From positions 372,001 to 436,000 of IMG/VR virus record IMGVR_UViG_3300018080_008436: DNA of 64,000 nt, one strand, 5' to 3'. The translations under genes were made by a program, and so were the position numbers. Positions 22,321 through 54,554 of this stretch are shown here, in pieces. The notes beneath the pieces are model-generated. The model searched no databases, was not told where the DNA came from, and was given only the letters and a program-made list of their open reading frames with translations. Numbering within the stretch: the first letter of the stretch is position 1; every line of letters starts with the position of its first letter.

Positions 22321-22380
22321 AACACAACACCGACAAAAGATTATTTAATCTTTTATTCAAATAAATGAATCACAAGACCT

Positions 22381-22911
22381 TTAGAAAAGTCCGTTGCCAG
22401 CGATTTTTTCAGATACCTTTGCTCTCAAAGCCTTGACAATTTTCGGATGTAGTTGAGCCATATCTGTAAGTGGTCTCTCCATAGTCCATGATCTAACCAA
22501 TGTCATGAGCCTAACATTTTCAAGCTCTATGAAGTCAGCAAATTGAGCATCTTCAATACTTTGAATGGGCCTGGAGTTCATGATATACTCAGTGTCTTTT
22601 TGACTAGGGTATTTAAAAGTCATATTGAAAGAATGAGTTTTCTTGTCAGTACCTTCATACTCTTCGTCAAAATCTTTGATCACTGGTTCTCTTAGATCAT
22701 CAAGATAATACTCAACATCTATCTCGAAAGTGTCACTTTCTGTAATGAAGATGTCGTCATTGTTATCAACCTTAGGCTTTTCAACTTTTGGCTTTTCGGC
22801 CTTAACTTCCTCGACCTTTGGTTCTTCAACCTTTGGTTCTTCAACTTTAACTTCCTCAACCTTTGGTTCTTCAACCTTTGGCTTTTCAACTGTAGGTTTT
22901 TGCTCGTCCAT
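22381..22911 (-). CDS. Tail assembly chaperone-like paralog with KVEEP repeats
   Basis: Likely start MDEQKP at 22911 (AAAGGA upstream); aligns by eye with 23219-23650. Confidence 0.55.
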   Translation of the reverse strand: MDEQKPTVEKPKVEEPKVEEVKVEEPKVEEPKVEEVKAEKPKVEKPKVDNNDDIFITESDTFEIDVEYYLDDLREPVIKDFDEEYEGTDKKTHSFNMTFKYPSQKDTEYIMNSRPIQSIEDAQFADFIELENVRLMTLVRSWTMERPLTDMAQLHPKIVKALRAKVSEKIAGNGLF

Positions 22912-22943
22912 TTTTTTCTTTCCTTTTTGTCTTCTGCGCCTTC

Positions 22944-23650
22944 TCATATTTCTCTCATCATTTTTGTTCCAGGCTTCATTGTTGACCTGGCCTCAGATTT
23001 GAATTTTTGTGCTTGCGCCTTAGCGTCCAATGCGGCATTCTTTACCCTTTTCATGTAATTATGTTTTTGAATCCATTTATAAGGTAAAGATGCAATATAC
23101 GTGGGAGTCCAGCCATATTCTTCAATAAAGCTGAGTTCCACAAGGTCTCTCATAATATCAGGATCTACAGCAGTTGTTATGGACCCCGTGCTCATAAAAT
23201 AGCCTAACAACTGCTCATCTATTTTTTTTCCTCTTCCTCGCTCAAATAAGTTATCTCATCATAGGCGTTGAGGATAGTTTCGGCAATCTCTGGAGCCAAA
23301 CTTTTAATAGATTTCTCTGTCACTCTAACAGGGACTTGATTACCTTTGTTGTCGGTTGCTGTCGCATCCCAACTATGAATCAATTGGACAAGTCGGTTCT
23401 CTTTGTATAACTTATAATTGAATCGACGGTTTCCTTCCCCGTCCAATTCAATCCCACCTTCTTGTAAGTCATTGTAAAGCCCCCAAGTCAACTGTTTCAT
23501 TTTAACAGTAATCTTCTTCAGCTTTTCCTTATCTTCATCTGTTAGGTCTTCAGAAGTTTTGAACTCTTGTTCTGAGTAGGATTGATAATGCAGTCCTATT
23601 TTTTTGTAGTAGATAATGACATCTACTGTGCTGTCTTCTTTGATAAACAT
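22944..23650 (-). CDS. Tail assembly chaperone G (23219-23650) and -1 frameshift product GT (to 22944)
   Basis: G ends GAA AAA AAA TAG. The -1 frame continues ATA GAT GAG CAG TTG TTA GGC into the 88-aa ORF with YGWTPTYIASLP, typical of the T part. Lies between tube and tape measure. Confidence 0.8.
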
Positions 23651-23691
23651 AGCACAACTTTCTCCTATTGTTATGTGTTGGTATTATACAG

Positions 23692-23719
23692 AAAAAAGCC
23701 CTCTAAAAGATAGAGGGCT
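23692..23719 (-). terminator. Intrinsic terminator after tail tube
   Basis: AGCCCTCTA-tctt-ttAGAGGGCT followed by a T-tract; a second hairpin at 23733-23755. Confidence 0.7.
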
Positions 23720-23786
23720 AGAAATAGAAGGTGGTCCCTTTTTATTAAAGGGACCTTGATAAATTGTGCAAATGAGTAACTTGGTA

Positions 23787-24716
23787 TTATGGGGAAGCAG
23801 AAAGATCCCAAGGGAATCCAGTCTGATGGGTAACTCCCGTAAATCCAACTGTTGAAATGACAGGACCCGTATTCAAGGTAGGTTCTACCCTGTGGAATCT
23901 AACTTTCATTTCGGTTGTTGAAGATCCACCCGTACAATTACTGCTCAATCCAAACTGGAGGGTATGTACTCCGTCTGCACAATAATCTTCGAATGTTTCA
24001 GCCCCGTTAAAGTCTGGTGCATTGTAAACAGAAAGCGTTCCAGAGATCTGTCTGATACCAGGAACAATATCGAATGGGAACAAGTCAGCTTGACCCAAAC
24101 CATATACTGTTTCAATGTTGTTGTTCACGGTGAATTCGAAATTACTGAATTTAATATCAGTCAAAACGGCAGGGATGTCGTTATTTACTGGGTCAGTTGC
24201 ACCGCCAGCAATGATTGTGACGTTGACTTTATCCCAAGTAAGCAACTTTTCCGCATCAGTGAAGTGAGGTGGAGGATTGGAACCAAACGCATTTGCGCTT
24301 GTACCAATAACATCCAAAGAAAACTGAGCAACTTCACCAGCCGCTACTGAAAAATTGAAAGTATTTACAAAGAGGTTTTCAAACAATCTGTCTCTGCTAC
24401 AGAAGTAATAAAGCTGGATATCTTTAGTACTGAGACCACCACAAGCATCGCCTGCGTCATCTCTACCAGCGGCCCATTGGATCACGCTGTCTGTTCCAGA
24501 TAGAAATGTTTCGGTGACGGGTCCGCTAATGCTTCCGCCAACCTCGATTTTACCGTATACGTAGGCATCCCTGTCCCAGTCACCTGAAACAAGGTCGGGT
24601 GCCTCGATTTCTTGTCTTGCAGTGATATTAGCATCGGAGAATCGGAGTTGAGTACCACCGATATCTGCAATACCTCTATAACCTGCATTTACTAAACCAT
24701 TAGCTCCTATTGACAT
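23787..24716 (-). CDS. Major tail tube protein
   Basis: 309 aa with IEVGGSISGP, FNFSVAAGEVAQFSLDVIG, FEFTVNNNIE and GIRQISGTLSVY; strong AAGGAG RBS; directly upstream of the chaperones. Confidence 0.8.
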   Translation of the reverse strand: MSIGANGLVNAGYRGIADIGGTQLRFSDANITARQEIEAPDLVSGDWDRDAYVYGKIEVGGSISGPVTETFLSGTDSVIQWAAGRDDAGDACGGLSTKDIQLYYFCSRDRLFENLFVNTFNFSVAAGEVAQFSLDVIGTSANAFGSNPPPHFTDAEKLLTWDKVNVTIIAGGATDPVNNDIPAVLTDIKFSNFEFTVNNNIETVYGLGQADLFPFDIVPGIRQISGTLSVYNAPDFNGAETFEDYCADGVHTLQFGLSSNCTGGSSTTEMKVRFHRVEPTLNTGPVISTVGFTGVTHQTGFPWDLSASP

Positions 24717-24821
24717 ATCATTTATCTCCTTCTTGTCGCAATTGATTTAAGGTTTCTCCCTAAATCTGCACCAATATTAATTATATTCTCTAACTTTTTA
24801 CAAAATCCCTTTGTTACGATA

Positions 24822-25175: not shown

Positions 25176-25187
25176 TCTCTTTCCTCC

Positions 25188-25769
25188 TTAAGCAGACGAA
25201 CTGCTTGACTCAGATTGAGAACTCATACTCTGAGAACTCATACTCTGAGAACTATCACTTTGAGAACTATCAGACTGAGAACTCATACTCTGAGAGCTAC
25301 TAGATTCACTTTGTGAACTTTCAGATTTTGAACTCATACTCTGCGAACTCATACTCTGCGAACTCATGCTTTGAGTACTTGAGCTATTACTTTGTGAGCT
25401 TCCAGATACTCCACCAGAACTACTTGAACTTTCTGAGTAATTTTCAGATGAAGTCGAGCTTTCTGATTGACTGGATGAACTATCACTTGAAGACTGACCA
25501 TATTCTGCTTGATCAACAAAATATTCAATCCAACCATTAACCAACTCTGTGAAGTCAGCGGCAGGTGAGGAGGCTCCAGGAGCCACATCAGCCAAATCTT
25601 TAATTAAATAGGTAGGAAACGTAGATCCATCAACCTTCCTGATACTCGTAGATATAAGAAGATATGAATCTCTCGTCATCAAACCATCAGACAATATGGC
25701 AGTCTGCAAATTTACAGATACTGTCGAAGTACTGCCATCTTCTTCATGAAATATTTGAACAGTTGCCAT
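25188..25769 (-). CDS. Small virion protein with ~100-aa Ser-rich SSQS(M/D/E) tail
   Basis: 193 aa; C-terminal 15-bp tandem repeats. Confidence 0.6.
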   Translation of the reverse strand: MATVQIFHEEDGSTSTVSVNLQTAILSDGLMTRDSYLLISTSIRKVDGSTFPTYLIKDLADVAPGASSPAADFTELVNGWIEYFVDQAEYGQSSSDSSSSQSESSTSSENYSESSSSSGGVSGSSQSNSSSTQSMSSQSMSSQSMSSKSESSQSESSSSQSMSSQSDSSQSDSSQSMSSQSMSSQSESSSSSA

Positions 25770-25854
25770 GTTTACAACCCCTAAATATAAAGTTTTAAGT
25801 CTTATTCTATATCAAATTGCCGAAACCCTTTCAACAATTTGTTATTTTTCCCCT

Positions 25855-26877: not shown

Positions 26878-27092
26878 TATCCAGAATATCCCGTTTTTAT
26901 ATCGCGATACCAATCGCCAAGTCGCAATTCCATATCACCACTTTTCTCTTTTTCAATCTCTTCCATGTTTTTTCTAAGTCTAGACATTGGTTTCAAACGC
27001 CCCTGATCCAATGTATCAAAAGATCCATTGACACAAGATTTGTAAATTTCCATTTTTCTAGCATATCTAGCGAATCTGTTCTTTATCCTCAT
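26877..27092 (-). CDS. Small basic hypothetical protein
   Basis: 71 aa, overlapping both neighbours. Confidence 0.5.
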   Translation of the reverse strand: MRIKNRFARYARKMEIYKSCVNGSFDTLDQGRLKPMSRLRKNMEEIEKEKSGDMELRLGDWYRDIKTGYSG

Positions 27093-27787
27093 GGAGACTC
27101 CCTTCCAAATTGAATATCATCAGTAGGTGTTTTGTAAGAATCAAATAAACTATGTCTTGCGAATCTCTTGCCAACATGTTCTTGACCCATCAAGATCACA
27201 TTTCCAGTAATAATACTGTCCATAGAAAACATAGCAAGCTTTCTTTGCTCTGTTCCGTACTGAGAGACATCTGGAGACTGTTCTGCGGCAAATAGGCGGT
27301 CATACGCATACGATACGGCCAATCTAGCTGTAACCAAAGGAATAGGATCTGGATATTCCAATATGCTGATTAAACTATCAGCGTCATAACTGGAAGTAAC
27401 TGAGTTCAGAATCAATTGATCTAAATTAGGAATTGATTCAATAACCGCTTCTTCATAATCACATTCACTTTGAAGTCTAACTAACTGACCTTTGGCGAAT
27501 GGCCCAGTATCATGAACTGAAACTTTTACATTTGTTCCAGAAGAAACATTATTGAGGATCTCTGTTTCATGGATTTTGATTCGCCTCAATGGACATACAT
27601 ATATTGGGCGAAGTCTTGCGTCAACTTCCTGTTGGGCAAACTTAATGAATTCGCAAATCTGATCTGGAGTAAATTTACTCCTATTTGTATTATCACATTT
27701 GCCAGGAACAGGAGTTCCTATGTTTCTGTCGCCAACTGTAACATTCTCAGGTAGTAATGTGATGGCATTTTGAACTGTACAATACAT
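27089..27787 (-). CDS. Head-tail adaptor (Mu gp36/DUF1320-like)
   Basis: MYCTV...AQQEVDARLRPIYVCPL...PIPLVTARLAVSYAY pattern of gp36-like adaptors. Confidence 0.6.
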   Translation of the reverse strand: MYCTVQNAITLLPENVTVGDRNIGTPVPGKCDNTNRSKFTPDQICEFIKFAQQEVDARLRPIYVCPLRRIKIHETEILNNVSSGTNVKVSVHDTGPFAKGQLVRLQSECDYEEAVIESIPNLDQLILNSVTSSYDADSLISILEYPDPIPLVTARLAVSYAYDRLFAAEQSPDVSQYGTEQRKLAMFSMDSIITGNVILMGQEHVGKRFARHSLFDSYKTPTDDIQFGRESP

Positions 27788-27797: not shown

Positions 27798-27848
27798 AAA
27801 AAAAAGCACTCTTGTTATTTATTTCAATAACAGGAGTGCTTTTCCCTA
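27798..27848 (-). terminator. Terminator hairpin overlapping an AGG-N19-GAAAT promoter motif
   Basis: AAAAGCACTCCTGTTATT-gaaata-AATAACAAGAGTGCTTTTTTTT. Confidence 0.65.
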
Positions 27849-27867: not shown

Positions 27868-28083
27868 TTATAGATCGTACAGATAATCCCCGATATTTAT
27901 GAACTCAAAAGCTACATCATTTACTCTGTTCACTTTATCGGTTGTTTCTGAATTCCTTTCACTACATTCACAAATTCCATCATACCAAGGAAAAGTACAT
28001 TGCGTACATAATCCATTCGCTTTTGCCCAAGCGATATGATCTTTAAGATACTTTCGTTTCTCTTTCCGTTCTTGTTTAGTCAT
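27868..28083 (-). CDS. Small Cys-rich (Zn-binding) hypothetical protein
   Basis: CTQC...CEC motif. Confidence 0.5.
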   Translation of the reverse strand: MTKQERKEKRKYLKDHIAWAKANGLCTQCTFPWYDGICECSERNSETTDKVNRVNDVAFEFINIGDYLYDL

Positions 28084-29171
28084 TATTTGTTTTTCTTTTG
28101 GAAATCTGCTTGCGCTCTAATGCAAGAACCCTGAGAAACAGAATAAAATGGACTTTTGGAATGCCTTACTTGCCAGACATCAAATGGAAACTCAGAATCG
28201 TCCAAGCATTCCTTAAACATCTTACAATATCCCTTAGGCATCGAAGTCCCCCCAGAAATTACAATTTCAATTTCACCATCAATCTCTGCGTCTTTGGACC
28301 TAAATTCCTGAGACATATGATGGATAATACGATTGATTGTCTCTTGGTAGTAAATTCTTAAAGCCGCGAGAACTCTATCACTCATATCAAATGATCCAAG
28401 ATCAAGTTTCTTTTCTTTTTGCTTCAGAACTTTACTTGGAGCTACTCCTGTTACTTTTGACGCTTGTTCGTCAATATAATCTCCACTCTTCGTAATTGAG
28501 AATGTGTTTAGACTCATTCCTTTCAAGCAAAGAGCAACATTTGTCATTCCACCTCCGCAACTAATTGCAACGCCAGTCAAAGGCATTTCACCGTCATCAG
28601 TTTTAGCAATAGGAGCGCAGTCATAGGCAACGGCCATACCTTCATTTACAGGTTTGGCATCATATCCCATTTGATCAAAGAAACTTTTAAGAACCATTTC
28701 GTGGAATCTGTTGTCCATATCTCGATCAAGAGGATTGGCAGGAACTGAGAACCTAAGTGGTTCGTTATCTACAATTGGTTCTCCAACAACAGCTTTGATA
28801 ATGTAGAACAACAACTCAGAGGATTCTTTAAGATTTGGATTAAGAATACCATCTTTCATTGGTCGAACAACTTCACCTTTACCAATTGCATTTACAAGTC
28901 TCAAAGCGTCTTCGCCAACGATATAATATTTCTTTCCGACTTTTACATAAAGATAGTCACTTCTATCCAAAAGATCGACAGCTTCTTCTGAAACGTCCAG
29001 TGGATAAAGCATATCTCTATGGAATCTGTTGACAAAAGTTCCATCTTCGGTTTGTCTTGCTACAACGATGTTGCTTGTTCCAACATCAACACCTACTCCA
29101 GGCTTGTACTTCTTTTTACCAGCCTTTTTCTCAACGGGAGTCTCATCTACATCAAGTATATCATCGCTCAT
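28083..29171 (-). CDS. Actin-fold ATPase (MreB/MamK-like)
   Basis: Phosphate-1 GVDVGTSN, connect-1 VNEGMAV, phosphate-2 SCGGGMTNV, SGDYID, adenosine ISGGTSMPKG. Confidence 0.85.
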   Translation of the reverse strand: MSDDILDVDETPVEKKAGKKKYKPGVGVDVGTSNIVVARQTEDGTFVNRFHRDMLYPLDVSEEAVDLLDRSDYLYVKVGKKYYIVGEDALRLVNAIGKGEVVRPMKDGILNPNLKESSELLFYIIKAVVGEPIVDNEPLRFSVPANPLDRDMDNRFHEMVLKSFFDQMGYDAKPVNEGMAVAYDCAPIAKTDDGEMPLTGVAISCGGGMTNVALCLKGMSLNTFSITKSGDYIDEQASKVTGVAPSKVLKQKEKKLDLGSFDMSDRVLAALRIYYQETINRIIHHMSQEFRSKDAEIDGEIEIVISGGTSMPKGYCKMFKECLDDSEFPFDVWQVRHSKSPFYSVSQGSCIRAQADFQKKNK

Positions 29172-29718: not shown

Positions 29719-29748
29719 GCATCTCCTTTTGGAGATATTATACAAATT

Positions 29749-33310: not shown

Positions 33311-33357
33311 ACTAAATAATCATTTAGATTTTTTCTCAAAAATGCAAAGCCATCCCT

Positions 33358-36774: not shown

Positions 36775-36855
36775 TATATACTCCTTAGGTTAAATGAAAA
36801 TAATGTTCGGTATATATTTCAAGAGATCACCCCCTTTACCCTTCTAGATATTATA

Positions 36856-37747: not shown

Positions 37748-37822
37748 TGGTGCCCCTGCTGGGACTCGAACCCAGATTAGCAAGGTTAGAGCTTGCCGCT
37801 TTTGCCTTTAAGCTACAGAAGC
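37748..37822 (-). tRNA. Amber suppressor tRNA, anticodon CUA
   Basis: 75-nt cloverleaf GCTTCTG TA GCTT AAAGGCAA AAGC G GCAAG CT-CTA-AC CTTGC TAAT CTGGG TTCGAGT CCCAG CAGGGGC A CCA; anticodon at 37787-37789. Confidence 0.9.
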
Positions 37823-37836: not shown

Positions 37837-37864
37837 ATTATAACTCATGATTACTTGTTGTCAA
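37837..37864 (-). promoter_or_regulatory. Consensus sigma70/sigmaA promoter for the tRNA operon
   Basis: TTGACA (37859-37864), 16-nt spacer, TATAAT (37837-37842). Confidence 0.85.
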
Positions 37865-40578: not shown

Positions 40579-40657
40579 AAGTAGAATTTGCATACCCTTT
40601 TGTGCATTATACATATTTTCAGGGTATAATTTAGTAAACCGCATAGGAGAACAGACA

Positions 40658-41369: not shown

Positions 41370-41376
41370 GGGTAAT

Positions 41377-43969: not shown

Positions 43970-45723
43970 TTCATAAAGAACGGGTCATCATCATCGTCGT
44001 CGTCATCAAATTCTACAGGTGGCAGATCTTCCTCAGGATGTTTTCTCTTAGGTGGCAATGGTTCGTCTTTCGTTGAAGGGCCAAACAATGATGCAAGTTC
44101 TGCTTCAAAATCTACATCATCCCATATCAACTCATCAAGATCTTCTTCTGCACCAGGAGAAAGTGGGTCTGATGGATCAACTTCTGCACCATCGATAGCA
44201 TCTCCAGTACCTTCATCAATGTCACCAGCATCTTTGTCTTCTTCATCTGTTTCGGTTTCCCAGAAACCAGTTTCATCCAACTGATCTTTGAATCGATTCA
44301 GAATTTCTTTCGCTTCTTCTTGATCACTAATAATATAACTTGATGCTTCGAAAAGCTCTTGTACTGGTCCAGCACCCATATATCCAACCAATCCTAATCC
44401 AACGATATCTTCTGGTTTACATTGCATGAATCTTCTGAAGTTCTCAGGACCAATCTGCATTTGCATTTGCTCATTTACCAATTCATCTGATTCTTTTAGA
44501 ATGGCAATCGCCTCTTCCATCTCCAAAGGACGTTGTCCTCTGCTTGCTCTAGACTCATTGTCCAATTGGTGATCAGTTGCTTTTGAGAAAATACCCTTGG
44601 TAAGTTCCTGACAAATAATAATAAAGTTCATACCTTGAGCTACAGTGTTACCTTCATCATCATTATGACTCCAACCAGTTCCTTTTTGGCCTAACTGATC
44701 AGCCATCATCCTAACCATCTCTGGATCGATGTAATAAAAATGCTGACACATCAAATTAGAGAACTTTTCATAAAGTCCTAAGAGTTGAGGATTAATGTCA
44801 TTGATCGCACCTTGGACTTCTTCCATCTCAGTTACATCAAATAATTCATTAAGTCCTGCGCCTTGAGCCAATGAATTCATGATGATGCGTTTGTTAATTT
44901 CACCTTCAAGTTCTGGAGTTATTTCAATATCTACTTCTGGGAAGTCTTCTTCACCTGAAGGACCCATCTCTTCCATATATTTGATTTCTAACTCATCCCT
45001 ATCAACATTCCATTTACGAGAGATAACGTCTTTTGCGAGGTCCATCAACTGCTCTTCATTTCCTTGTTCCAAAGCTTGGATTTCTCTAAGGAGTCCAAGA
45101 ATCTGCATCATAACTTGTTGAATGTTAGTGTTTACAGGGATATCCTTCTCTTCTGCAATATTCGTAATATATTCATAGTTTGCGCGAGCTAGTTCATCAC
45201 CATAATGAGAAAGCACTGGATTTTGAGAAAGGATATTGTTTTGAGGAATATCTTGCCAGAAATTTCTTACACCTCTTTGTACTGAGGCATCGTAATCAGC
45301 GGCGGCGACCTTCTGTTCAAGAAGACGGATTTCGTAACCACTTATCTTTTTTTTTAACTCCGAAGTAATGGTCGGCAAGTTATCAGGGGATACTTGTGCG
45401 GCCAATGGAAGATCTTCTTCTGGTTCTTCAGCTTTAGGTTTTGGTTGTACGATAGGTTTAGGATTACGTGGTCTTCTTTTCCCAGGTTTTCCAGGCTTAG
45501 TCTTTTCTCCTGGTGTAGTTCTGGGTTTGGTTGTTGGAGCGGCTGGAGCAGGTCCTGATCTTTCGGTTGATGGAGCAGGTTCAGCTTCTCTTACCATATC
45601 TTCTGCTTGAACAACTAAATTGCCATCTTCGTCTAGCCATCCAGCTTTTTTACCAAATTCTTCCCAATCTTTTTGAGACAATTTAACGGTCTTTTTGCCA
45701 TTGGCGTTTTTTATAATTTTCAT
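43966..45723 (-). CDS. Hypothetical protein with MKIIKNA...KLSQKDWEEFGKKAGW N-terminal module
   Basis: 585 aa; Pro/Thr linker; acidic tail; AGG-N19-GAATT upstream. Confidence 0.65.
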   Translation of the reverse strand: MKIIKNANGKKTVKLSQKDWEEFGKKAGWLDEDGNLVVQAEDMVREAEPAPSTERSGPAPAAPTTKPRTTPGEKTKPGKPGKRRPRNPKPIVQPKPKAEEPEEDLPLAAQVSPDNLPTITSELKKKISGYEIRLLEQKVAAADYDASVQRGVRNFWQDIPQNNILSQNPVLSHYGDELARANYEYITNIAEEKDIPVNTNIQQVMMQILGLLREIQALEQGNEEQLMDLAKDVISRKWNVDRDELEIKYMEEMGPSGEEDFPEVDIEITPELEGEINKRIIMNSLAQGAGLNELFDVTEMEEVQGAINDINPQLLGLYEKFSNLMCQHFYYIDPEMVRMMADQLGQKGTGWSHNDDEGNTVAQGMNFIIICQELTKGIFSKATDHQLDNESRASRGQRPLEMEEAIAILKESDELVNEQMQMQIGPENFRRFMQCKPEDIVGLGLVGYMGAGPVQELFEASSYIISDQEEAKEILNRFKDQLDETGFWETETDEEDKDAGDIDEGTGDAIDGAEVDPSDPLSPGAEEDLDELIWDDVDFEAELASLFGPSTKDEPLPPKRKHPEEDLPPVEFDDDDDDDDPFFMN

Positions 45724-45785
45724 AATATCAATATCCTCTAAAAACTAATTGATGTTTAATTCCAATTAAGGTAGTAATAATCCTT

Positions 45786-46736
45786 TTATGGATTTACTTC
45801 TAGCCCCATTCTTGCATATTCTTCTAGATTTATCGCTGGATTTGAGGCTTTGACTTTTACAAAAGTCGAATGGTCACATTCTTTCCACAAATCTTCTCTA
45901 TCCTCTCCCCCTTCAAAGATTATCATATCATAATCTATGTGTGCGGGAGTCATCCACTCTCCATTATGCCAAATCTGGAAATCCACATCTGCATCTCTAT
46001 ATTGGTTCAACTTGTTGATATGGACTTCTGCATAAAGGAAATCTGGTGGTTTTTCAATTTTTAATGTATATTTATTATAGCCTGCTGGGACTATCCAAGG
46101 GTTTTGGAAAACAAAATACAAATCTTTTGAAACTTTTAACAAATCACCTCTTTGTTGAACCCAATTCCCCTTTTCATACCAATTCTTATTTTGAGAGAAT
46201 GAAACAATTCCCCTTCTAACAACATTTTGCTTATCCTTATATGTCCCATAATATCCTGATTTAGCAATGGGACTGTAAAAAGTCAGATGACTTCCATCGG
46301 CCTCCACTTGTCTTCGAGCGTTATTAAAGGCTCTAACTTCTTCATCTTCCTCTTCTTCAATAGGATCAGCTTCTTGAGGAGCGTTCGGATCAGCTTCTTG
46401 AGGAGCGTTCGGATCAGCTTCTTGAGGAGCGTTCGGATCTATCCCTGCCAGAAGTTGAGCATTTCGTTCTCTCTCCAATAATTCAAAAAGATCATCTGGT
46501 TCATCTATGTCTGGAATTTTCATTTTTCCATCTTTCAACGCATCGTCTATTTGTTCTGGAGTTAGAGGTTTTTTATAACCTTTTATCTTCCCTTGTTTAT
46601 CAAGTACTGGTTGCCTTTCTTCTTGCGTCCAGCCTATTTCTTTTAGCCTATTCTGATATTCTTTACATTCTATATAGTCTGCTCTTTGAGCCTCTTTAAG
46701 AAAAGAATAAAATTCAAATTGCTTGTACCAACTCAT
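45786..46736 (-). CDS. Hypothetical protein (MSWYKQ...LKEAQ N-terminus)
   Basis: 316 aa; contains DPNAPQEA x3. Confidence 0.6.
   Translation of the reverse strand: MSWYKQFEFYSFLKEAQRADYIECKEYQNRLKEIGWTQEERQPVLDKQGKIKGYKKPLTPEQIDDALKDGKMKIPDIDEPDDLFELLERERNAQLLAGIDPNAPQEADPNAPQEADPNAPQEADPIEEEEDEEVRAFNNARRQVEADGSHLTFYSPIAKSGYYGTYKDKQNVVRRGIVSFSQNKNWYEKGNWVQQRGDLLKVSKDLYFVFQNPWIVPAGYNKYTLKIEKPPDFLYAEVHINKLNQYRDADVDFQIWHNGEWMTPAHIDYDMIIFEGGEDREDLWKECDHSTFVKVKASNPAINLEEYARMGLEVNP
46363..46439. repeat. 24-bp tandem repeat x3 (DPNAPQEA)
   Basis: GGATCAGCTTCTTGAGGAGCGTTC repeated in frame. Confidence 0.9.
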
Positions 46737-46752: not shown

Positions 46753-47160
46753 TTATAACATCATTAAATCACTAAAATCTGTATCTTCTCTTTCAGGTGG
46801 GTTACAAAGTTCCTCAAGCTGTTCTACAGAAAGGCTTGGCTTAATATTGTCAAGTCCTCTGAACTCAACAACTTGATCGGTCCCCTTGTTTTTAAGAACT
46901 ATGGCGTAAAGATCTCCACTAATGAAGTAAACGGATATATCATTTCTAGCAAGATATTCTCTGGCATAAGATTCTGACTGGACACTCCAACCACCTTCTT
47001 GACCCAGTTCCATTAGTCTTTTTACACCTGTAACATCTTCTTTCGTAAAATTGAAGTTTCTGTTTGCAGTTTTTAGCCAACCAGATTTCTGACCCATGAC
47101 CAACCACTCTTTTTTAGACATTTGAACTGTTGTCTTTCCAGCTTTTCTAACTAGTTTCAT
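46753..47160 (-). CDS. Hypothetical protein with MKLVRKA...MSKKEWLVMGQKSGW module
   Basis: 135 aa. Confidence 0.65.
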   Translation of the reverse strand: MKLVRKAGKTTVQMSKKEWLVMGQKSGWLKTANRNFNFTKEDVTGVKRLMELGQEGGWSVQSESYAREYLARNDISVYFISGDLYAIVLKNKGTDQVVEFRGLDNIKPSLSVEQLEELCNPPEREDTDFSDLMML

Positions 47161-47163: not shown

Positions 47164-47442
47164 TTACTCCTCAACATTAGCAACATCTTTTTCAGATGGT
47201 GCTTGGCCATGTTCCAGATGCATTTTCATTGCATCACGTAGCTTGAATTTATCTGTATATCTAACAGTAATTACTCCACCTGGATAAATGAGGTCCCAGC
47301 AGATTTCACCATCACAATCTTTATTCCTAATCATCCCTCCAGCATCACGCCATCTGTCGATTAGTTCTTCCATTTCTCTTCTAAAAACAAAGACATCATT
47401 CTCTCTTTGTAAAAATGGCATCGCTATTTTAATAATCTTCAT
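47164..47442 (-). CDS. Hypothetical protein (MKIIKIA tag)
   Basis: About 92 aa; AGG-N19-GAATA motif upstream. Confidence 0.6.
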   Translation of the reverse strand: MKIIKIAMPFLQRENDVFVFRREMEELIDRWRDAGGMIRNKDCDGEICWDLIYPGGVITVRYTDKFKLRDAMKMHLEHGQAPSEKDVANVEE

Positions 47443-47512
47443 CAAATATCCCCAAATGAATTGCTTATTCTAATTTATTCTTCAATATCAACCATCTAAC
47501 CTTCATTAACAC

Positions 47513-48195: not shown

Positions 48196-48220
48196 TGTAA
48201 TACCTCCATGATTATTATAC

Positions 48221-48249
48221 AAAAAACCCCTTGTAGAGACAAGGGGTTT
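48221..48249 (-). terminator. Intrinsic terminator
   Basis: AACCCCTTGT-ctct-ACAAGGGGTTTTTT. Confidence 0.75.
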
Positions 48250-48266: not shown

Positions 48267-48581
48267 TTATTTTTCTGGTTTGGGTTGTGGAGGTTGGGGT
48301 CTGCCTTTTCCATGGCCTCTCATGCCTTTTCCAGGGCCATTACCATGTCTTCCCCTCATGCCTTCACGATGACGCTTCATCCTTTCTTTCATCATAGCAG
48401 TTAACTCTGAACGATCTAACTTACCATCTTTGTCAACGTCAAAGTTTTCCATGACTCTGTCCAATACCTTTTCCAAACACTTCTCTGGACTTGGACGTTC
48501 AGGGCGTTCGGGTCTCTCGGTTTCTTGGGCTGAAAGAGTGCAGGCAAAAACTAGGGCGAGTAATACGATTAATGCTTTCAT
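48267..48581 (-). CDS. Secreted EF-hand protein with signal peptide
   Basis: Likely start MKALIVLLALVFACTLSA after AAAGGAG; EF-hand DVDKDGKLDRSE; Arg/Gly/Pro-rich tail. Confidence 0.7.
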   Translation of the reverse strand: MKALIVLLALVFACTLSAQETERPERPERPSPEKCLEKVLDRVMENFDVDKDGKLDRSELTAMMKERMKRHREGMRGRHGNGPGKGMRGHGKGRPQPPQPKPEK

Positions 48582-48707
48582 AATAAGATCTCCTTTATTA
48601 AGCAATGAATTTGTTAACGCAAGTGCTGTGCCAAATGTTTTATTGGGTAAATGGTCACTATAGTGCGCAAATATTAGAATTTTGGTAAAAATAGTGCGCA
48701 AAATATG

Positions 48708-49043
48708 CTATCTAAACTCATTTCCCCATTTGTCGAGGTTTTCGTATGGTATTGTAAACAAATAATCTTCAACTTTGCTTGAACGTGTCCCAAAAGAGAC
48801 ATCATAATATATCCCATCACATTTGACTAAAGCGTGGTTAACTCCATCCTTTCTACAAACAACAACATCTGCTTTGTATCCCGCTTCTCTTAATGCTTTG
48901 CAATACCTTCCACACAGATTACTGCAATCATTGGCATTGGGAATCTTCTTTTCTTTATTAAGTGACCAGAAAATATCTGGTAATGGTATTTTTTGAAAAT
49001 TTAGTAATTTGTATAAGAACGATTTGAACCATTTCATGATCAC
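48708..49043 (-). CDS. Transglutaminase/papain-like Cys protease domain protein
   Basis: DCSN...HALV...YYD (Cys-His-Asp). Confidence 0.5.
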   Translation of the reverse strand: MIMKWFKSFLYKLLNFQKIPLPDIFWSLNKEKKIPNANDCSNLCGRYCKALREAGYKADVVVCRKDGVNHALVKCDGIYYDVSFGTRSSKVEDYLFTIPYENLDKWGNEFR

Positions 49044-49461: not shown

Positions 49462-49743
49462 TTAACCAAGAGTATCTTGAACTCTGTCCTCTCGTAACCA
49501 AAATTCTCCACTTCCACCAACAGGTTTCAATTTATATTGTGTCCTGCCGAACATTTTACGTTTACTAAGAACTTCAACAGGAAAGAAAACAGAAGTTGAC
49601 CCTCTTCCAATTTCATAAAACTGAGCATATTTTATTTGTCCAACTTCGCTCTCATCCAGTTCCATCTCTTCTGGCACTTTTCTTTCTGGCTCTTCCTTCT
49701 GTGGCATAGGAGGAATTACTTGAGCCGCCTTCATTATTTTCAT
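49462..49743 (-). CDS. Hypothetical protein (MKIMKAAQ tag)
   Basis: 93 aa, SH3-like C-terminal pattern. Confidence 0.55.
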   Translation of the reverse strand: MKIMKAAQVIPPMPQKEEPERKVPEEMELDESEVGQIKYAQFYEIGRGSTSVFFPVEVLSKRKMFGRTQYKLKPVGGSGEFWLREDRVQDTLG

Positions 49744-50168
49744 TATCCATCTCCTTTTATTATCTCGAATCCATTATCTAACCAACCTGCAACTGGAACT
49801 CCTTCAACAGGAGAGATGCCCATGCCAAATTTCAAAGAGACGACATCATATCCAAGCATTCTCAAAAGAACCAAAGCTTGACTGGAAGTATGACCAACAT
49901 AACAAACAAGAAGAATCTTTTTGTCTTTAGGTAATTTATCCAGGTTCTCTTTTTCTAATAAATCTAGCCAGAAAATGTTCTCTGCTCCTTCGATATGCCC
50001 TTCAGCAAAGTCTTCGGGCTTTCTTATGTCTAAGATGAAGAAGTTATCCAAGCCTTTTTCCTTCAACTCAACAGGAGTGATGTAGTTCCAAGTATCGTCT
50101 GTTTTGTCAATGAACTCTTTCAGCTTTTCCGTGAAAGTTAGATCGCATGATATTTTTATGAGCTTCAT
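49743..50168 (-). CDS. Rhodanese-like domain protein (MKLIKIS tag)
   Basis: ILDIRKPEDFAEGHIEGAENI, LLVCYVG, LGYDVVSLKFGM...W. Confidence 0.85.
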   Translation of the reverse strand: MKLIKISCDLTFTEKLKEFIDKTDDTWNYITPVELKEKGLDNFFILDIRKPEDFAEGHIEGAENIFWLDLLEKENLDKLPKDKKILLVCYVGHTSSQALVLLRMLGYDVVSLKFGMGISPVEGVPVAGWLDNGFEIIKGDG

Positions 50169-50233
50169 TCACCCTTCCTTAATTCATAAGTATAGTCTTA
50201 TTATACTTCTAAATAAGGTGTTAGTATCCCTAC

Positions 50234-50957: not shown

Positions 50958-51091
50958 GATTTAACCTCTTTATGCTACTTACCATAAGGACATTATACAG
51001 ATAACCTTGATTCATTTTTCTCTTGTAAAAAGCAACATTTTTCCACCTGGACTCTTACTATCAGAGATTCTGGTTTTCAAGCAAAATCGAC

Positions 51092-51167: not shown

Positions 51168-51566
51168 TTAGCTGTCTTGAATTCCTTCTCTTGCTTTTTG
51201 GAGTTTGTCCATTAGCATTTGGTGTTCTTCAGGAGTAGGTTCCTCTGGAACTATGTCTTCCATTTCGTCATGCTCAAACAAATCCCAAAGCCCTTGCCTT
51301 TTTAATTGCTCTTCTATTATAGCCGCACGGAATTTATTGCATTTACCTTCGAAATAATCATCTACTTCAGCCAAATCAAGTGGTTGGTTTATAGCATCTT
51401 GGAAAATTTTTCTGAACCTGGCTAATACAGCTTCTGTACCTCCATCCCAATCTCCTTCCAAATCGTTTGCTTTTTTCATCCACCCAGCCTTCTTCCCCAT
51501 ATCAGTCCACTCTTTGCGAGTCATCTTAATCCTAGTTTTTCCACCAGCAGTTTTAACTATTTTCAT
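51168..51566 (-). CDS. Hypothetical protein with MKIVKTA...MTRKEWTDMGKKAGW module
   Basis: 132 aa; AGG-N18-GAATA upstream. Confidence 0.65.
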   Translation of the reverse strand: MKIVKTAGGKTRIKMTRKEWTDMGKKAGWMKKANDLEGDWDGGTEAVLARFRKIFQDAINQPLDLAEVDDYFEGKCNKFRAAIIEEQLKRQGLWDLFEHDEMEDIVPEEPTPEEHQMLMDKLQKAREGIQDS

Positions 51567-51645
51567 TTTAATCTCTCCATTAAGGTCTTAATTCTAATTT
51601 ATTCAAAATCTTTTCTTTTGATCCTTTAATCAGCAGTAATTGTTA

Positions 51646-52173
51646 TTAAGCCTTTGCCCAAGCCAAGCCTACCCCATTTACACCTAAAGCATTTTTACAT
51701 GCTTCTATCGTTGTACCTTTAGTTATTACATTATCAACAAAATAAACATTCTTGTTGTCTAAATCCATAACGTCTGCATCATCTCTGACAATCATATTGT
51801 GCTCTTCAACCGTGTAATTAGGAAGATTTTGCTTTCTCCTTTGATGAGATGGTTCTATACTAGAAGACCGACCCAATGGATCATATATCTCAGATCCAGT
51901 TATTTTAGCAATTGCCTCGCATAAAAGCATGTTTGACCCCCTATCCCCTGATGATGATGGAACTGGTACTAAGAGGCTATTAGATGCAACATATTTCGCC
52001 ATAGTATCAGCCGCTATCTTAATGGCATCTGAATTTTTGTTCTTTATTTCGTAAGATATCTTTCTAACAAAAGCTTCTTGCTGTGATAGTTCTCTTCTTC
52101 TAGGAGAAATATATTGATAAATGGCTATATTTTTGCCATCATTTAAAAATTGAGCTTTTTTATACCAGTTCAT
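51646..52173 (-). CDS. ComF-like phosphoribosyltransferase-fold protein (MNWYKKAQ tag)
   Basis: LVPVPSS and VYFVDNVITKGTTIEAC PRPP-binding loop. Confidence 0.75.
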   Translation of the reverse strand: MNWYKKAQFLNDGKNIAIYQYISPRRRELSQQEAFVRKISYEIKNKNSDAIKIAADTMAKYVASNSLLVPVPSSSGDRGSNMLLCEAIAKITGSEIYDPLGRSSSIEPSHQRRKQNLPNYTVEEHNMIVRDDADVMDLDNKNVYFVDNVITKGTTIEACKNALGVNGVGLAWAKA

Positions 52174-52219
52174 AACAATATTAATTCAAAAATCTGTTCT
52201 TCTGACCCTTTGTAAACAC

Positions 52220-52253: not shown

Positions 52254-52283
52254 ATACTTTCTACGAGATATCTAAGCTTTCGC

Positions 52284-53147
52284 TTAGCTACCAGCGGTAA
52301 CTGTGACCTTGGCTACTGCGTAGGTATTGATGATTACAATACCAACTTCCTCATAAATTACCCAACCGAGGCGGAGCTTCTTTGGATCGTCTGCTGGGAG
52401 GACGGTGATATCCTGACGAATCGGGAATGCACCAACGTACTCAGCAGGAGCGAGCAAGAAGACGGTATCGGTAGGCATCTTTGAAGATACGTGAATATCA
52501 GCAGTAAAGAGATGTCCGAACAAACCAGTTGTAAGAACTTCTTTCTGTGTTGCTTCATCATAGACAGTCTTACCAAATCCACGAATGTCAGCGTAACGAA
52601 GAGCATGCATAACAAGCTTACCTACTGTGAGGTCGTGCTGTTCGATGGTTGCGAAAGCTTGGTTCAAGGCGTTAAGGGTAAGAGCACCACCAGTTGAAAC
52701 AACGGTATGTGCGGCATCAATTGCGGCGGCGATAGCGTTGAAGATGTTAAGATCTTCTTCCTTCTGAATCGCTTCTTTAGCTTTGATCTGAGCACGGTCT
52801 ACAATGTAGAATCTACGAGCTTTAATCTCACTCAAGCGAATAGTAGGATTGGTTGCAATCTCGAACGTAGGAACGAGAATTTCTTCACCTTCGGTAATAC
52901 CATCAGGTACAGCGCCACGACGAGGAATAACCTGGGCGGTCTGGCGAACGTCTTTCTCGTAACGTGCATAAGCGCCCTGAGGAAGCTCATCCACCATGAG
53001 AAGTTTACGTCCAACTGCTTGATATTCCAATGCTCTACGAATTGGCTCGACCATGGCCTGAGCCAATGCTACTCTACCTTCAGGTGTCTCAAGCGCCTGA
53101 GCGATAAGAGCTTCTCTTTCTGCATTAACAGATCTTTTATTAATCAT
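52284..53147 (-). CDS. Major capsid protein (HK97 fold)
   Basis: 287 aa, downstream of protease/scaffold and decoration genes; strong codon bias; GRVALAQAMVEPIRRALEYQAVGRKLLMVDELPQG pattern of phage capsids. Confidence 0.85.
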   Translation of the reverse strand: MINKRSVNAEREALIAQALETPEGRVALAQAMVEPIRRALEYQAVGRKLLMVDELPQGAYARYEKDVRQTAQVIPRRGAVPDGITEGEEILVPTFEIATNPTIRLSEIKARRFYIVDRAQIKAKEAIQKEEDLNIFNAIAAAIDAAHTVVSTGGALTLNALNQAFATIEQHDLTVGKLVMHALRYADIRGFGKTVYDEATQKEVLTTGLFGHLFTADIHVSSKMPTDTVFLLAPAEYVGAFPIRQDITVLPADDPKKLRLGWVIYEEVGIVIINTYAVAKVTVTAGS

Positions 53148-53217
53148 TTTGTTTCTCTCCTAATTAGTTGTTCTATAGGGGGTAATAGCCTATAAAATAA
53201 ACCTTTTTTACTATACC

Positions 53218-53739
53218 TTATACAAGAAGCTTGTATTCGATATAAGTGTTAGAGTTATCGCCAGCAAGGGCCTGATCGCCATTGATGTCGATGCCAGGTA
53301 CGCCACTTGGGTATGAGCCAGCGGCACGAGTCAAACGAGCAACAGGAGTTCCAGTGGTCAAACCACCTTCATCTGTAGTGTCGAGTACACCAAGGGCATT
53401 ACCATAAAGCAATGCGCCAGGATTGGCGGATGATACGTTTGAAGCGAACTGGTCGGTTGCAAACTCACCACCTGAGTGATAGACAGTCATTTTACCTGAA
53501 GCTTTGGTTTCGTCAAAATAATCGGAAACCCTGTTCTGCCATCCTGCTGAGATGCCAGGCATTGCTGAAGCGCTAGTTGACTTGGTGTCACCAGCTACAC
53601 CGTAAACGGCGGCGTTGGTGCTTGCAAGTACTACTTCGCCAGATGTATTAAGAGAGACAAGCTGTCCTTCTTTAATAGTTTCGCCAGAGGCGACATCCTG
53701 TTCAGCGGCTACTACATGAAATTTTTCTACAAGAGCCAT
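53218..53739 (-). CDS. Capsid decoration/cement protein
   Basis: 173 aa, Gly/Ala-rich beta-tulip-like (GETIKEGQLVSLNTSG; SGKMTVY...EFATDQF); immediately upstream of the MCP. Confidence 0.7.
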   Translation of the reverse strand: MALVEKFHVVAAEQDVASGETIKEGQLVSLNTSGEVVLASTNAAVYGVAGDTKSTSASAMPGISAGWQNRVSDYFDETKASGKMTVYHSGGEFATDQFASNVSSANPGALLYGNALGVLDTTDEGGLTTGTPVARLTRAAGSYPSGVPGIDINGDQALAGDNSNTYIEYKLLV

Positions 53740-53961
53740 TTTTTGTTTCTCCTTTTAGAGTTAATTTTTTGTCAATTTTCATTGACGGTTTTTTAACCAA
53801 TTTGGTAAACGAAAACCAGCTTAACGCTACGATCTTTCTTCATTGATTTACTGAAAAAGTTGCCGTCATCTTATTAATCAAAACTGCAAACATTGAATTA
53901 CTTACCAACTTGTTATATCCCTTTGTTCTATATTAATAAGGTGATTTCCTGCTTACTATAC

Positions 53962-54008
53962 AAAAAAACCACGAAATATTGCTGATAAAAGCCATATTTC
54001 GTGGTTTT
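53962..54008 (-). terminator. Intrinsic terminator
   Basis: AAAACCACGAAATAT...ATATTTCGTGGTTTTTTT. Confidence 0.7.
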
Positions 54009-54028
54009 GGCACAAAAATGATTGTTGT

Positions 54029-54262
54029 TTATTCTTTTAGAGACTTTCTTCTTTGCAATTCTTTTTTCATAGCATCTCTGGTTTTATCTAACTCTTCTAA
54101 GTCATATCCCCAATCGATACCATAATTTTCCTGTTCAATAATTTGATTATCATAATAAAGCCAAGCCAACTCATTTTCTAATTCTTCTGTTGGAATTTCT
54201 TCTATTGGTTCTTTAGATATAATGTATTTATGTTCTTTGTTAGACACTCTTATTAATTTCAT
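54029..54262 (-). CDS. Hypothetical protein (MKLIRVS tag)
   Basis: 77 aa. Confidence 0.6.
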   Translation of the reverse strand: MKLIRVSNKEHKYIISKEPIEEIPTEELENELAWLYYDNQIIEQENYGIDWGYDLEELDKTRDAMKKELQRRKSLKE

Positions 54263-54510
54263 AATTTCCCCAATATTTCATCTAATCTTGTTGAAATCTC
54301 GACATCTGATAATTGTCTGAATGGAGCCTTAAATACAGTCCCAGACGGCAATGTAACCTGCACCTTGTCTCCACCTCCCAACACCTCTCTAAACTCATGA
54401 TAAGTTAATCTATTGGGCTTGGCTCTTAATCCCTTGACATATACGACATTGTTGTTTGAGTCTACCCAAACAATCGATGGAATTTTAGAAGATATCTTGA
54501 TTATTTTCAT
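54259..54510 (-). CDS. Hypothetical protein (MKIIKIS tag)
   Basis: 83 aa; AGG-N19-GAATT directly upstream. Confidence 0.6.
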   Translation of the reverse strand: MKIIKISSKIPSIVWVDSNNNVVYVKGLRAKPNRLTYHEFREVLGGGDKVQVTLPSGTVFKAPFRQLSDVEISTRLDEILGKL

Positions 54511-54554
54511 AACAATTAATTCACTAATATAAAAAGAACTTCCTTTAAGAATAC

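What the first reader, a model, noticed from the sequence alone, without database searches (positions are those of the whole stretch)
22354..54545. Thirteen sigma-H-like AGG-N19-GAAT promoters define a late regulon
Seen: fixed spacing (19 nt in 12 sites, 18 in one) between (A)AGG and GAA(T/A/C/G). The sites lie upstream of the capsid, tail tube and adaptor genes and most tag-bearing accessory genes. Established: the B. subtilis sigma-H consensus is AGGA...GAAT with this spacing. Inference: late transcription uses a phage-encoded or host sigma-H/ECF-like factor. The suppressor operon instead uses a housekeeping-sigma promoter, so it is probably early or constitutive.
Basis: partly seen in the sequence, partly recalled or inferred. 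Interest (0 to 1): 0.6.

Follow-up and report, generated by a model that had tools for sequence, protein, structure and literature searches.

The report
Sigma-H-type late promoters of a megaphage
A 476-kb uncultivated phage carries about 40-50 promoter-like sites of the bacterial sigma-H type in front of its capsid, tail and packaging genes, and it encodes its own sigma-H-like factor that most likely reads them.

Summary
All 13 sites (12 with AGG-N19-GAA, one N18) lie on the coding (-) strand, in 13 of the window's 24 intergenic gaps. The whole-window count is at chance. The signal is in placement and spacing: 11.7-fold denser between genes than within them (p=1.4e-9), at N19 only.

Genome-wide (476 kb) there are about 40-50 such sites, with consensus RWAGGwww...TnTnGAATWA. 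That matches TSS-mapped C. difficile SigH promoters. The sites sit a median 35 nt before start codons, and 30% directly follow a terminator. Related phages keep both boxes while the spacer diverges.

The phage has no RNA polymerase core genes but four sigma genes. One of them (280 aa, outside the window) matches SigH models best and is 32% identical to Listeria SigH. Its -35-reading helix is nearly the same. It therefore most likely directs these promoters, although host sigma-H is not excluded and no RNA data could be obtained.

Refinements:
- The regulon is much larger than 13 sites.
- Five other gaps in the window carry TGTATAAT instead.
- The link to TAG-bearing genes is not supported.

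The sigma gene lies between clamp-loader and sliding-clamp genes. It ends in a conserved clamp-motif-like tail, which hints at replication-coupled late transcription.

The parts
54519..54544 (-). Sigma-H-type promoter (AGG 54544-54542, GAAT 54522-54519). It follows a terminator hairpin at 54602-54561. The ATG of the 83-aa ORF (54510) falls at the predicted start site, so the transcript may be leaderless.
   Evidence: PWM 25.4 bits; layout
53925..53950 (-). Sigma-H-type promoter (GAAC variant) after a terminator at 54007-53966. It drives the 173-aa gene 53218-53739 and the major capsid gene through a 185-nt leader.
   Evidence: orthologous site kept in 9 related phages
52184..52209 (-). Sigma-H-type promoter directly after the capsid-gene terminator (52252-52225). 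It drives 51646-52173, and the ATG lies 10 nt after GAAT.
51601..51625 (-). Sigma-H-type promoter with N18 spacing, upstream of 51168-51566.
50206..50231 (-). Sigma-H-type promoter (GAAG variant) after a hairpin at 50282-50241. It drives the 49743-50168 operon, which includes the TAG-split gene 48267-49043.
47477..47502 (-). Sigma-H-type promoter after the terminator at 47539-47520. It drives 47164-47445, 46753-47160 and 45786-46736.
45759..45784 (-). Sigma-H-type promoter upstream of 43966-45723 (585 aa).
   Evidence: PWM 22.0
36817..36842 (-). Weaker sigma-H-type site (GAAA, PWM 11.1) after a hairpin at 36891-36860, upstream of 36031-36774.
33332..33357 (-). Sigma-H-type promoter (GAAA) upstream of 32909-33310 and the 1048-aa gene.
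   Evidence: PWM 19.3
27822..27847 (-). Sigma-H-type promoter (GAAA) upstream of 27089-27787.
   Evidence: PWM 20.5
25804..25829 (-). Sigma-H-type promoter upstream of 25188-25769. A weaker overlapping AGG-N19-GAAA starts at 25854.
   Evidence: PWM 20.8
24785..24810 (-). Sigma-H-type promoter upstream of the tail tube gene 23787-24716.
   Evidence: PF18906 E 1e-11
22355..22380 (-). Strongest sigma-H-type promoter (27.7 bits), upstream of 21217-22320 and the 2077-aa tape measure gene 14980-21213.
   Evidence: phrog_167 E 6e-18
52284..53147 (-). Major capsid protein gene.
   Evidence: phrog_2522 E 1.8e-72
37837..37864 (-). Housekeeping-type promoter TTGACA-N16-TATAAT in front of the suppressor tRNA.
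37748..37822 (-). tRNA with anticodon CUA (amber suppressor).
14958..14965 (-). TGTATAAT element (second promoter-like class) in a gap that lacks the sigma-H motif. Others lie at 23683-23690, 29737-29744, 48214-48221 and 50992-50999.
   Evidence: 9 in the window against 2.8 expected

Best explanation
The sites are promoters of the sigma-H type. Their -35 box is RWAGGwww and their -10 box is TnTnGAATWA, with 19 nt (rarely 18) between AGG and GAAT. They are most likely read by host core RNA polymerase carrying a phage-encoded sigma-H-like factor. That factor is 280 aa and is encoded at genome position 163,344-164,186, about 208 kb before the window.

The sigma gene sits in the replication module, between a DnaX-like clamp loader and a beta-clamp gene. 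That operon is preceded by a TGTATAAT element, so the factor would be made together with the replication proteins. It would then switch on about 40-50 transcription units. These hold the capsid, decoration-like, tail tube, tape measure, terminase, protease and tail genes, plus homing endonucleases and other accessory genes.

Many units are insulated, with an intrinsic terminator immediately followed by the next promoter.

Shown here: the motif, its spacing-specific intergenic enrichment, its orientation and its distance to genes. Also shown: its conservation in relatives, the presence and sigma-H affinity of the sigma gene, and the absence of recognisable phage RNA polymerase core genes. Inferred: which sigma binds, the start sites (expected 8-10 nt after GAAT) and the late timing.
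For: - Spacing-specific intergenic enrichment in the window and the genome, and an unbiased dyad scan.
- PWM hits above 14 bits: 37 in about 50 kb of intergenic sequence against 5 in 426 kb of coding sequence on the sense strand.
- The median distance from GAAT to the start codon is 35 nt. 11 of 37 sites follow a hairpin plus T-run, against 15 of 479 control positions.
- Close relatives show the N19 spike and mid-distance relatives show N18 plus N19.
- The promoter of the capsid operon keeps AGG and TAGAA(T/C) in 10 phages while the spacer diverges; mean column identity is 56%.
- A distant 548-kb relative has 13 intergenic AGG-N18-GAAT against 0-6 at other spacings.
- The motif equals TSS-mapped C. 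difficile SigH promoters (PMC7438776 Table 3).
- The phage sigma's top five NCBIfam hits are all SigH-group (PRK08295/TIGR02859) models, E 2e-25 to 2e-17; the next families are at 3e-8 or weaker.
- Its only PDB match is 3MZY, a sigma-H factor.
- It is 32% identical, E 6e-24, over regions 2-4 to the SigH of the canonical Listeria sigH locus. The helix is KAVDNALWRIRKK against KAIDNALQRVKKK, and 108 of 120 homologues keep it.
- The other three phage sigmas have RpoD-type 4.2 helices (RERIRQIE-like).
- No RNA polymerase beta, beta-prime or T7-type genes were found.
- Downstream genes are morphogenetic.
Against:
- The sigma scores far below the SigH equivalog cut-offs (best 89.5 bits against 212). 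It has a 16-aa insertion in the region-4 helix-turn-helix, so its true specificity is untested.
- A Firmicute host's own sigma-H would recognise the same sequences.
- Some sites are weak (36842 scores 11 bits).
- Five gaps in the structural region carry TGTATAAT instead, so the motif is not the only late-region signal.
- The PWM statistics are partly circular, because the PWM was trained on intergenic sites. The spacing tests are not.
Confidence: 0.7

Rival explanations
1. The sites are real sigma-H-type promoters but are read by the host's own sigma-H. The phage would then tie late gene expression to the host's transition or stationary state. Its sigma-H-like protein would serve another purpose, for instance manipulating host development as shown for phage SigF/G homologues.
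For: The motif cannot be told apart from C. difficile SigH promoters. Phage-borne sporulation-type sigmas can act on host regulons (bioRxiv 10.1101/2021.11.12.468384). The phage sigma is divergent and carries an insertion in region 4.
Against: All five whole genomes of distant relatives that were searched encode a homologue. One of them (G001), the only one scanned for the motif, has it at N18. Its gene sits in the replication module, not among host-interaction genes. The host is unknown, and a lytic megaphage that depended on a stationary-phase host factor for all its structural genes would be fragile.
Confidence: 0.17
2. The sites are promoters read by another factor: one of the three RpoD-like phage sigmas, or host sigma-A modified by a phage protein. 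The similarity to sigma-H promoters would then be a coincidence.
For: Three further sigma genes exist. Two other promoter-like classes show that the phage uses several specificities.
Against: Those three sigmas carry sigma-70-type region 4.2 helices, which fit TTGACA and not AGG. The TTGACA/TGCTAT and TGTATAAT classes already supply plausible targets for them.
Confidence: 0.06
3. The sites are not promoters. They could be a binding site for a dimeric regulator, an RNA-level signal in 5' leaders, or a compositional by-product of AT-rich intergenic DNA next to Shine-Dalgarno-like AGG.
For: The words are short and the whole-window count is at chance.
Against: - The spacing is strictly specific.
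- The two boxes are asymmetric, not palindromic.
- The orientation is fixed and the distance to start codons is about 35 nt.
- Sites sit immediately after terminators.
- The boxes are conserved with divergent spacers across phages.
Confidence: 0.05

Closest known systems
Sigma-H (Spo0H) of Firmicutes and its promoters (B. subtilis, C. difficile, Listeria)
   Same: The promoter architecture is the same: AGG-N18/19-GAAT with RW before AGG and T-x before GAAT. The sigma has regions 2 and 4, with the same FA-MCI-R-L motif and a nearly identical KA(V/I)DNAL-R(I/V)(R/K)KK helix.
   Different: - The phage protein is only 32% identical and lies below all equivalog cut-offs.
- It has an N-terminal extension of about 45 aa before the stretch that aligns with Listeria SigH (residue 46 aligns with residue 7).
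- It has a 16-aa insertion in the region-4 helix-turn-helix.
- It has a conserved acidic-hydrophobic C-terminal tail.
- Its gene lies between clamp-loader and clamp genes instead of in the yacP-sigH-rpmG-secE context.
- Its targets are virion genes, not transition-state genes.
Bacillus phage SPO1 gp28 and gp33/34 sigma cascade
   Same: Phage-encoded sigma factors redirect host core polymerase from host-sigma early promoters to later classes. By my recollection the gp28 -35 box is AGGAGA, which also contains AGG. In a published sigma tree, gp28 groups with sigH, sigD and sigI.
   Different: The SPO1 middle -10 box (TTTNTTT, from memory) differs from GAAT. No sequence relation to gp28 was tested here. 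PHROGs places all four sigmas of this phage in the general phrog_351.
Phage T4 late transcription (gp55, gp33, sliding clamp gp45); phage Mu MuC with the host beta clamp
   Same: A late promoter-specificity factor carries a short conserved hydrophobic and acidic C-terminal tail behind a variable linker (PMC2988020). The phage encodes its own clamp and clamp loader. For Mu, a late activator uses QL[SD]LF-like clamp-binding motifs (PMC12867686).
   Different: Here the factor is a full two-domain sigma and the promoters have both -35 and -10 boxes. Binding to the clamp is not shown. The tail (ED-LPLF) is only loosely like the polymerase tail (GSLFD). More distant relatives keep the gene order but lack the tail.
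Sporulation-type (SigF/SigG-like) sigma genes of Bacillus phages
   Same: These are phage-borne homologues of Firmicute alternative sigmas. JGI annotates the present family as 'sporulation-specific sigma factor'.
   Different: Those factors appear dispensable for lytic growth and act on host genes. Here a matching promoter set sits in front of the phage's own structural genes.

Membership tests
Sigma-H (Spo0H) sigma factors, TIGR02859 / PRK08295 | Scores above the curated equivalog cut-off | tested here: not met
   Best score 89.5 bits against a cut-off of 212 (NF006147); TIGR02859 scores 68.7 against 294.8
Sigma-H (Spo0H) sigma factors, TIGR02859 / PRK08295 | SigH models are the best-matching sigma subfamily | tested here: met
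   The top five hits are all SigH-group models, E 2e-25 to 2e-17; the next is generic sigma-70/ECF at 3e-8. The sole PDB hit is 3MZY, a sigma-H factor
Sigma-H (Spo0H) sigma factors, TIGR02859 / PRK08295 | Regions 2 and 4 with a SigH-type recognition helix | tested here: met
   Aligns across almost the whole of Listeria SigH, residues 7-198 of 201 (32% identity, E 6e-24). The KAVDNALWRIRKK helix is invariant or nearly so in the family, but the turn holds a 16-aa insertion
Sigma-H (Spo0H) sigma factors, TIGR02859 / PRK08295 | Chromosomal context yacP-sigH-rpmG-secE-nusG and a role at the transition state | tested here: not met
   The phage gene lies between a DnaX-like clamp loader and a beta clamp. 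The Listeria comparison locus shows the canonical upstream context
Sigma-H-dependent promoters | -35 RWAGGA and -10 GAAT with 18-19 nt between AGG and GAAT | tested here: met
   PWM; comparison with 40 listed C. difficile SigH promoters
Sigma-H-dependent promoters | Placed upstream of genes in sense orientation at promoter-like distance | tested here: met
   Median 35 nt to the start codon; 37 intergenic against 5 coding hits; terminator-promoter pairs
Sigma-H-dependent promoters | Transcription starts 8-10 nt after GAAT and depends on the sigma | not testable with these tools
Sliding-clamp-activated late transcription (T4 type) | Phage-encoded clamp and clamp loader | tested here: met
   PF00712 and PF02767 above cut-off; PF13177 at E 1.5e-38
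Sliding-clamp-activated late transcription (T4 type) | The specificity factor ends in a conserved hydrophobic/acidic clamp-binding tail behind a variable linker | tested here: inconclusive
   119 of 120 homologues end in [DE][DEG]-[LIMV]P[LIM]F within a few residues of the C-terminus. It is the only protein of this genome with that C-terminal motif. The function of the tail is untested
Sliding-clamp-activated late transcription (T4 type) | Physical binding of the factor to the clamp | tested here: inconclusive
   The complex prediction gave no verdict

The most novel reading that the evidence does not exclude
In this clade of megaphages the late sigma is a full-length sigma-H-like factor that is physically tethered to the phage's own beta-type sliding clamp through its conserved C-terminal (D/E)x-LPLF tail. 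Late (virion) transcription would then be licensed by ongoing phage DNA replication. This would be a T4-like clamp-activated mechanism that arose independently, on a bacterial-type Pol III/beta-clamp replisome and with a two-domain sigma.
Probability: 0.25. Interest if true: 0.8.

Novelty: new variant of a known kind. Interest (0 to 1): 0.6.

Why it matters
Huge uncultivated phages are known almost only from gene lists, and their transcription programmes are unknown. This window, together with the rest of the genome, gives a readable programme with three promoter-like classes:
- about 25-30 TTGACA/TGCTAT sites, mostly in the first 135 kb;
- about 50 TGTATAAT elements spread genome-wide;
- about 40-50 sigma-H-type sites in front of virion genes.

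The last class comes with a cognate phage-encoded sigma. That makes several things directly testable: annotation of transcription units, in vitro work with a purified factor and core polymerase, and prediction of the host phylum, since sigma-H is a Firmicute-type factor. The position of the sigma gene between clamp loader and clamp, and its clamp-motif-like tail, raise the prospect of a second, independent case of replication-coupled late transcription.

Tried and rejected
- Complex prediction on the clamp plus the sigma C-terminus (residues 236-280): busy six times, then returned no verdict (score 0.01). This counts neither for nor against binding.
- Megablast of 24 kb against the phage collection: no match.
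- Scan of genome contigs with the sigma: nothing. The host therefore stays unidentified.
- A paper search for literal consensus strings returned only noise. PMC2869324 held no consensus.
- The generic sigma-70 scan of 44-55 kb showed no excess (30 found, 29.5 expected), so sigma-70-type signals do not explain those gaps.
- Rfam found only the tRNA in the window.
- TAG-bearing genes: only 9 same-frame ORF pairs split by TAG exist in the genome.
- PHROGs and Pfam left most first genes behind the promoters unnamed.
- A quantitative PWM comparison with the C. difficile table was not run, because it would have required typing many sequences. The comparison was made by reading the table.


Full report
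**Setting.** The window is positions 372,001-436,000 of a 476,248-bp virus record (CheckV completeness 98%, 39% G+C). By a simple gene call of my own, about 91% of genes lie on the - strand. The record holds 58 tRNA genes, a tmRNA and one tRNA with anticodon CUA, which lies in the window at 37748-37822. The window is the morphogenetic region. It contains the major capsid gene at 52284-53147 (phrog_2522, E 1.8e-72) and a head-protease domain in 57687-60188. It also contains the tail tube gene at 23787-24716 (PF18906) and the tape measure gene at 14980-21213 (phrog_167).

**The observation.** All thirteen sites exist, on the - strand. N19 sites are at 54544, 53950, 52209, 50231, 47502, 45784, 36842, 33357, 27847, 25829, 24810 and 22380; the N18 site is at 51625.
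- The bare word is too short to be rare: 11 exact AGG-N19-GAAT in the window against 12.5 +/- 3.6 in shuffles.
- Placement and spacing are far from chance. There are 14 AGG-N19-GAA in 3,455 intergenic bases against 21 in 60,545 coding bases (11.7-fold, p=1.4e-9). Spacings 17, 18 and 20 show no enrichment.
- 13 of the 24 gaps of at least 35 nt hold a site.
- In the whole genome, intergenic sense-strand counts of AGG-Nx-GAAT are 22 at x=19 and 1-7 at all other x from 14 to 24. Coding counts are flat at 29-55.
- A scan of all trimer dyads at spacings 8-25, made without reference to the motif, ranks AGG-N19-GAA 28th of 4,096 (p about 4e-9). The better-ranked dyads seen trace to a TTGACA/TGCTAT class and to a CRISPR repeat.

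**Anatomy.** An iterated weight matrix gives RWAGG(a/g/t)ww, an unconserved spacer, then T-n-T-n-GAA(T/a/c)-W-A.
- At 14 bits or more there are 37 intergenic and 5 coding hits on the sense strand. These are concentrated at 394-471 kb (the virion module) and 221-307 kb, with few in the first 220 kb.
- The median distance from GAAT to the start codon is 35 nt.
- 11 of 37 sites directly follow a stable hairpin plus T-run, against 15 of 479 control positions. Seven of the thirteen window sites do so. An example is the capsid-gene terminator at 52252-52225, followed by the promoter at 52209.
- Two window sites (54544 and 52209) place the ATG at or within 3 nt of the expected start site, which suggests leaderless messages.

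**Conservation.** Eighty related loci were fetched with the capsid protein (63-93% identity).
- Close relatives show the same N19 spike in intergenic DNA: 31 against 2-9 at other spacings. Mid-distance relatives show spikes at N18 and N19, and the most distant ones only a weak signal.
- At the orthologous position upstream of the capsid operon, nine relatives and the window keep AGG and TAGAA(T/C) at fixed spacing. The spacer and flanks diverge, with a mean column identity of 56%.
- In 400 kb of a distant 548-kb relative, there are 13 intergenic AGG-N18-GAAT against 0-6 at other spacings. Its consensus is AAAGGATTTT...TATCGAATATATA.

**What reads the sites.** No RNA polymerase beta, beta-prime or single-subunit polymerase gene was found, so host core enzyme must be used.
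- The genome encodes four sigma-70-family proteins. Three are RpoD/RpoS-like, with region 4.2 helices of the RERIRQIE type.
- The fourth (280 aa, genome 163,344-164,186) has all its top five NCBIfam hits in the SigH group, at E 2e-25 to 2e-17. The next families score 3e-8 or weaker, but the protein lies well below the equivalog cut-offs.
- Its only match among solved structures is 3MZY, 'RNA polymerase sigma-H factor'.
- A tblastn hit led to a Listeria contig with the canonical mrnC-rlmB-yacP-sigH gene order. The phage protein aligns with that SigH over regions 2-4, at 32% identity and E 6e-24. It shares SF-FA-MCI-R-L in region 2 and has KAVDNALWRIRKK against KAIDNALQRVKKK in the -35-reading helix. 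A 16-residue insertion interrupts the helix-turn-helix.
- At least 441 homologues exist in metagenomes, many on long contigs. 108 of the best 120 keep the helix.

**The promoter side.** The table of SigH promoters of C. difficile with mapped starts shows AGG-N18/19-GAAT. A-rich bases precede AGG, T-x precedes GAAT, and starts fall 8-10 nt after GAAT (PMC7438776). Sigma and sites therefore match on both sides. The cognate pairing is an inference, not a measurement.

**The wider programme.** Two other promoter-like classes appeared.
- cTTGACAt-N13-TGCTAtgTT: about 25-30 copies, most of them between 2.5 and 135 kb.
- TGTATAAT(A) without a -35 box: 52 sense-strand copies, of which 30 are intergenic, spread over the genome.
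- The TGTATAAT class includes the gap before the operon that runs topoisomerase, tube-like gene, clamp loader, sigma-H-like gene, clamp.
- In the window TGTATAAT occurs 9 times against 2.8 expected. It fills five of the eleven gaps that lack the sigma-H motif (14965, 23690, 29744, 48221, 50999).
- A plausible order is host-sigma early promoters, then TGTATAAT-driven replication genes including the sigma-H-like factor, then sigma-H-type late units. That order is inferred from gene content only.
- Genes behind sigma-H-type sites outside the window include the large terminase, a trypsin-like protease and a beta-helix tail protein. They also include LAGLIDADG and HNH-like endonucleases, an NHL-repeat protein and a DUF285 protein.

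**An unexpected lead.**
- The sigma-H-like gene lies between a DnaX-like clamp loader (PF13177, E 1.5e-38) and a beta-clamp homologue (PF00712 and PF02767, above cut-off).
- The order loader, sigma, then a 394-437-aa gene whose product mostly starts MKF... recurs in five distant relatives. That gene occupies the clamp's position, but tblastn with the clamp did not match it.
- 119 of 120 homologues end in an acidic pair followed by [LIMV]-P-[LIM]-F within a few residues of the C-terminus, behind a variable linker. Listeria SigH lacks this tail, and no other protein of this genome has it at its C-terminus.
- The phage's Pol III alpha ends in a conserved Q(Y/F)(S/G)GS(L/I)FD tail.
- This architecture recalls T4 gp55 and gp33, and the QL[SD]LF motifs of Mu MuC.
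- A complex prediction gave no verdict, and four more distant sigmas lack the tail. Clamp coupling therefore remains a hypothesis.

**Verdict.** The count of thirteen is a window effect. 'Late' is inferred from gene content. The structural region uses a second signal as well, and the TAG association is not supported. The arrangement is a new variant of the known theme of phage sigma cascades. I found no paper that describes a sigma-H-type regulon in a phage. However, annotation pipelines already label such proteins 'sporulation-specific sigma factor'.

Noticed in passing
outside the window: genome C1:121,444-123,185 (- strand): A CRISPR-like array of about 28 copies of a 36-nt repeat (GGTACAGGCTCAAGAAAAACTTGAGCC.A.TGTGAC) with unique spacers mostly of about 36 nt. 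A sigma-H-type site (121360) lies just downstream.
   Followed up: no
genome C1:2,500-135,000, e.g. 13293, 10112, 8999 (- strand); in the window only the tRNA promoter at 37837-37864: An early-looking promoter class, cTTGACAt-N13-TGCTAtgTT, with an A/T-rich upstream stretch; about 25-30 copies.
   Followed up: partly
window 14958-14965, 23683-23690, 29737-29744, 48214-48221, 50992-50999 (- strand); 52 copies genome-wide: TGTATAAT(A), an extended -10-like element without a -35 box. It is strongly enriched before genes, including the operon that holds the sigma-H-like gene (C1:168832).
   Followed up: partly
outside the window: C1:161,944-165,410 (locus L100): The sigma-H-like gene is sandwiched between DnaX-like clamp-loader and beta-clamp genes. 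The loader-sigma order recurs in five distant relatives, each followed by a 394-437-aa gene that tblastn did not match to the clamp. The sigma family ends in a conserved (D/E)(D/E/G)-LPLF tail.
   Followed up: partly
outside the window: C1:184,467-187,397: A Pol III alpha-type polymerase whose homologues end in a conserved Q(Y/F)(S/G)GS(L/I)FD tail, a likely clamp-binding motif. No family B polymerase was found.
   Followed up: partly
window 54508-54544 and 52171-52209 (- strand): At two promoters the ATG lies 9-11 nt after GAAT, at or within 3 nt of the predicted start site, with no Shine-Dalgarno sequence. These are possible leaderless mRNAs.
   Followed up: no
window about 53907-53915 (- strand) and orthologous positions in L008-L016: An invariant block AA(G/A)TTGG(C)A lies about 17-20 nt after the -10 box, in the 185-nt leader of the capsid operon, in all ten aligned phages. 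Its function is unknown.
   Followed up: no
window 28083-29171 (- strand): An actin-like protein (Volactin PF25216, E 3e-63; MreB-like) among the structural genes.
   Followed up: no
window 41356-43383 (+) and 39103-40764 (-): A CCA-adding/poly(A) polymerase-type enzyme with an HD domain lies on the minority strand beside the suppressor tRNA region. Next to it is a GT4 glycosyltransferase. A TTGGCA-N16-TATAGT candidate promoter is at 40866.
   Followed up: no
outside the window: C1:165,743-166,795: A second tail-tube-like gene (PF18906) inside the replication module, just upstream of the clamp loader.
   Followed up: no
whole genome; window 48267-49043: Only 9 same-frame ORF pairs are separated by a single TAG, while 82 of 564 genes end in TAG. 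Amber read-through therefore seems to affect few genes, despite the suppressor tRNA.
   Followed up: partly
outside the window: C1:267,355-267,663: A 102-aa protein ending in ...DDKLDVFEE, another acidic-hydrophobic C-terminal tail of the clamp-binding kind. It matched no family.
   Followed up: no
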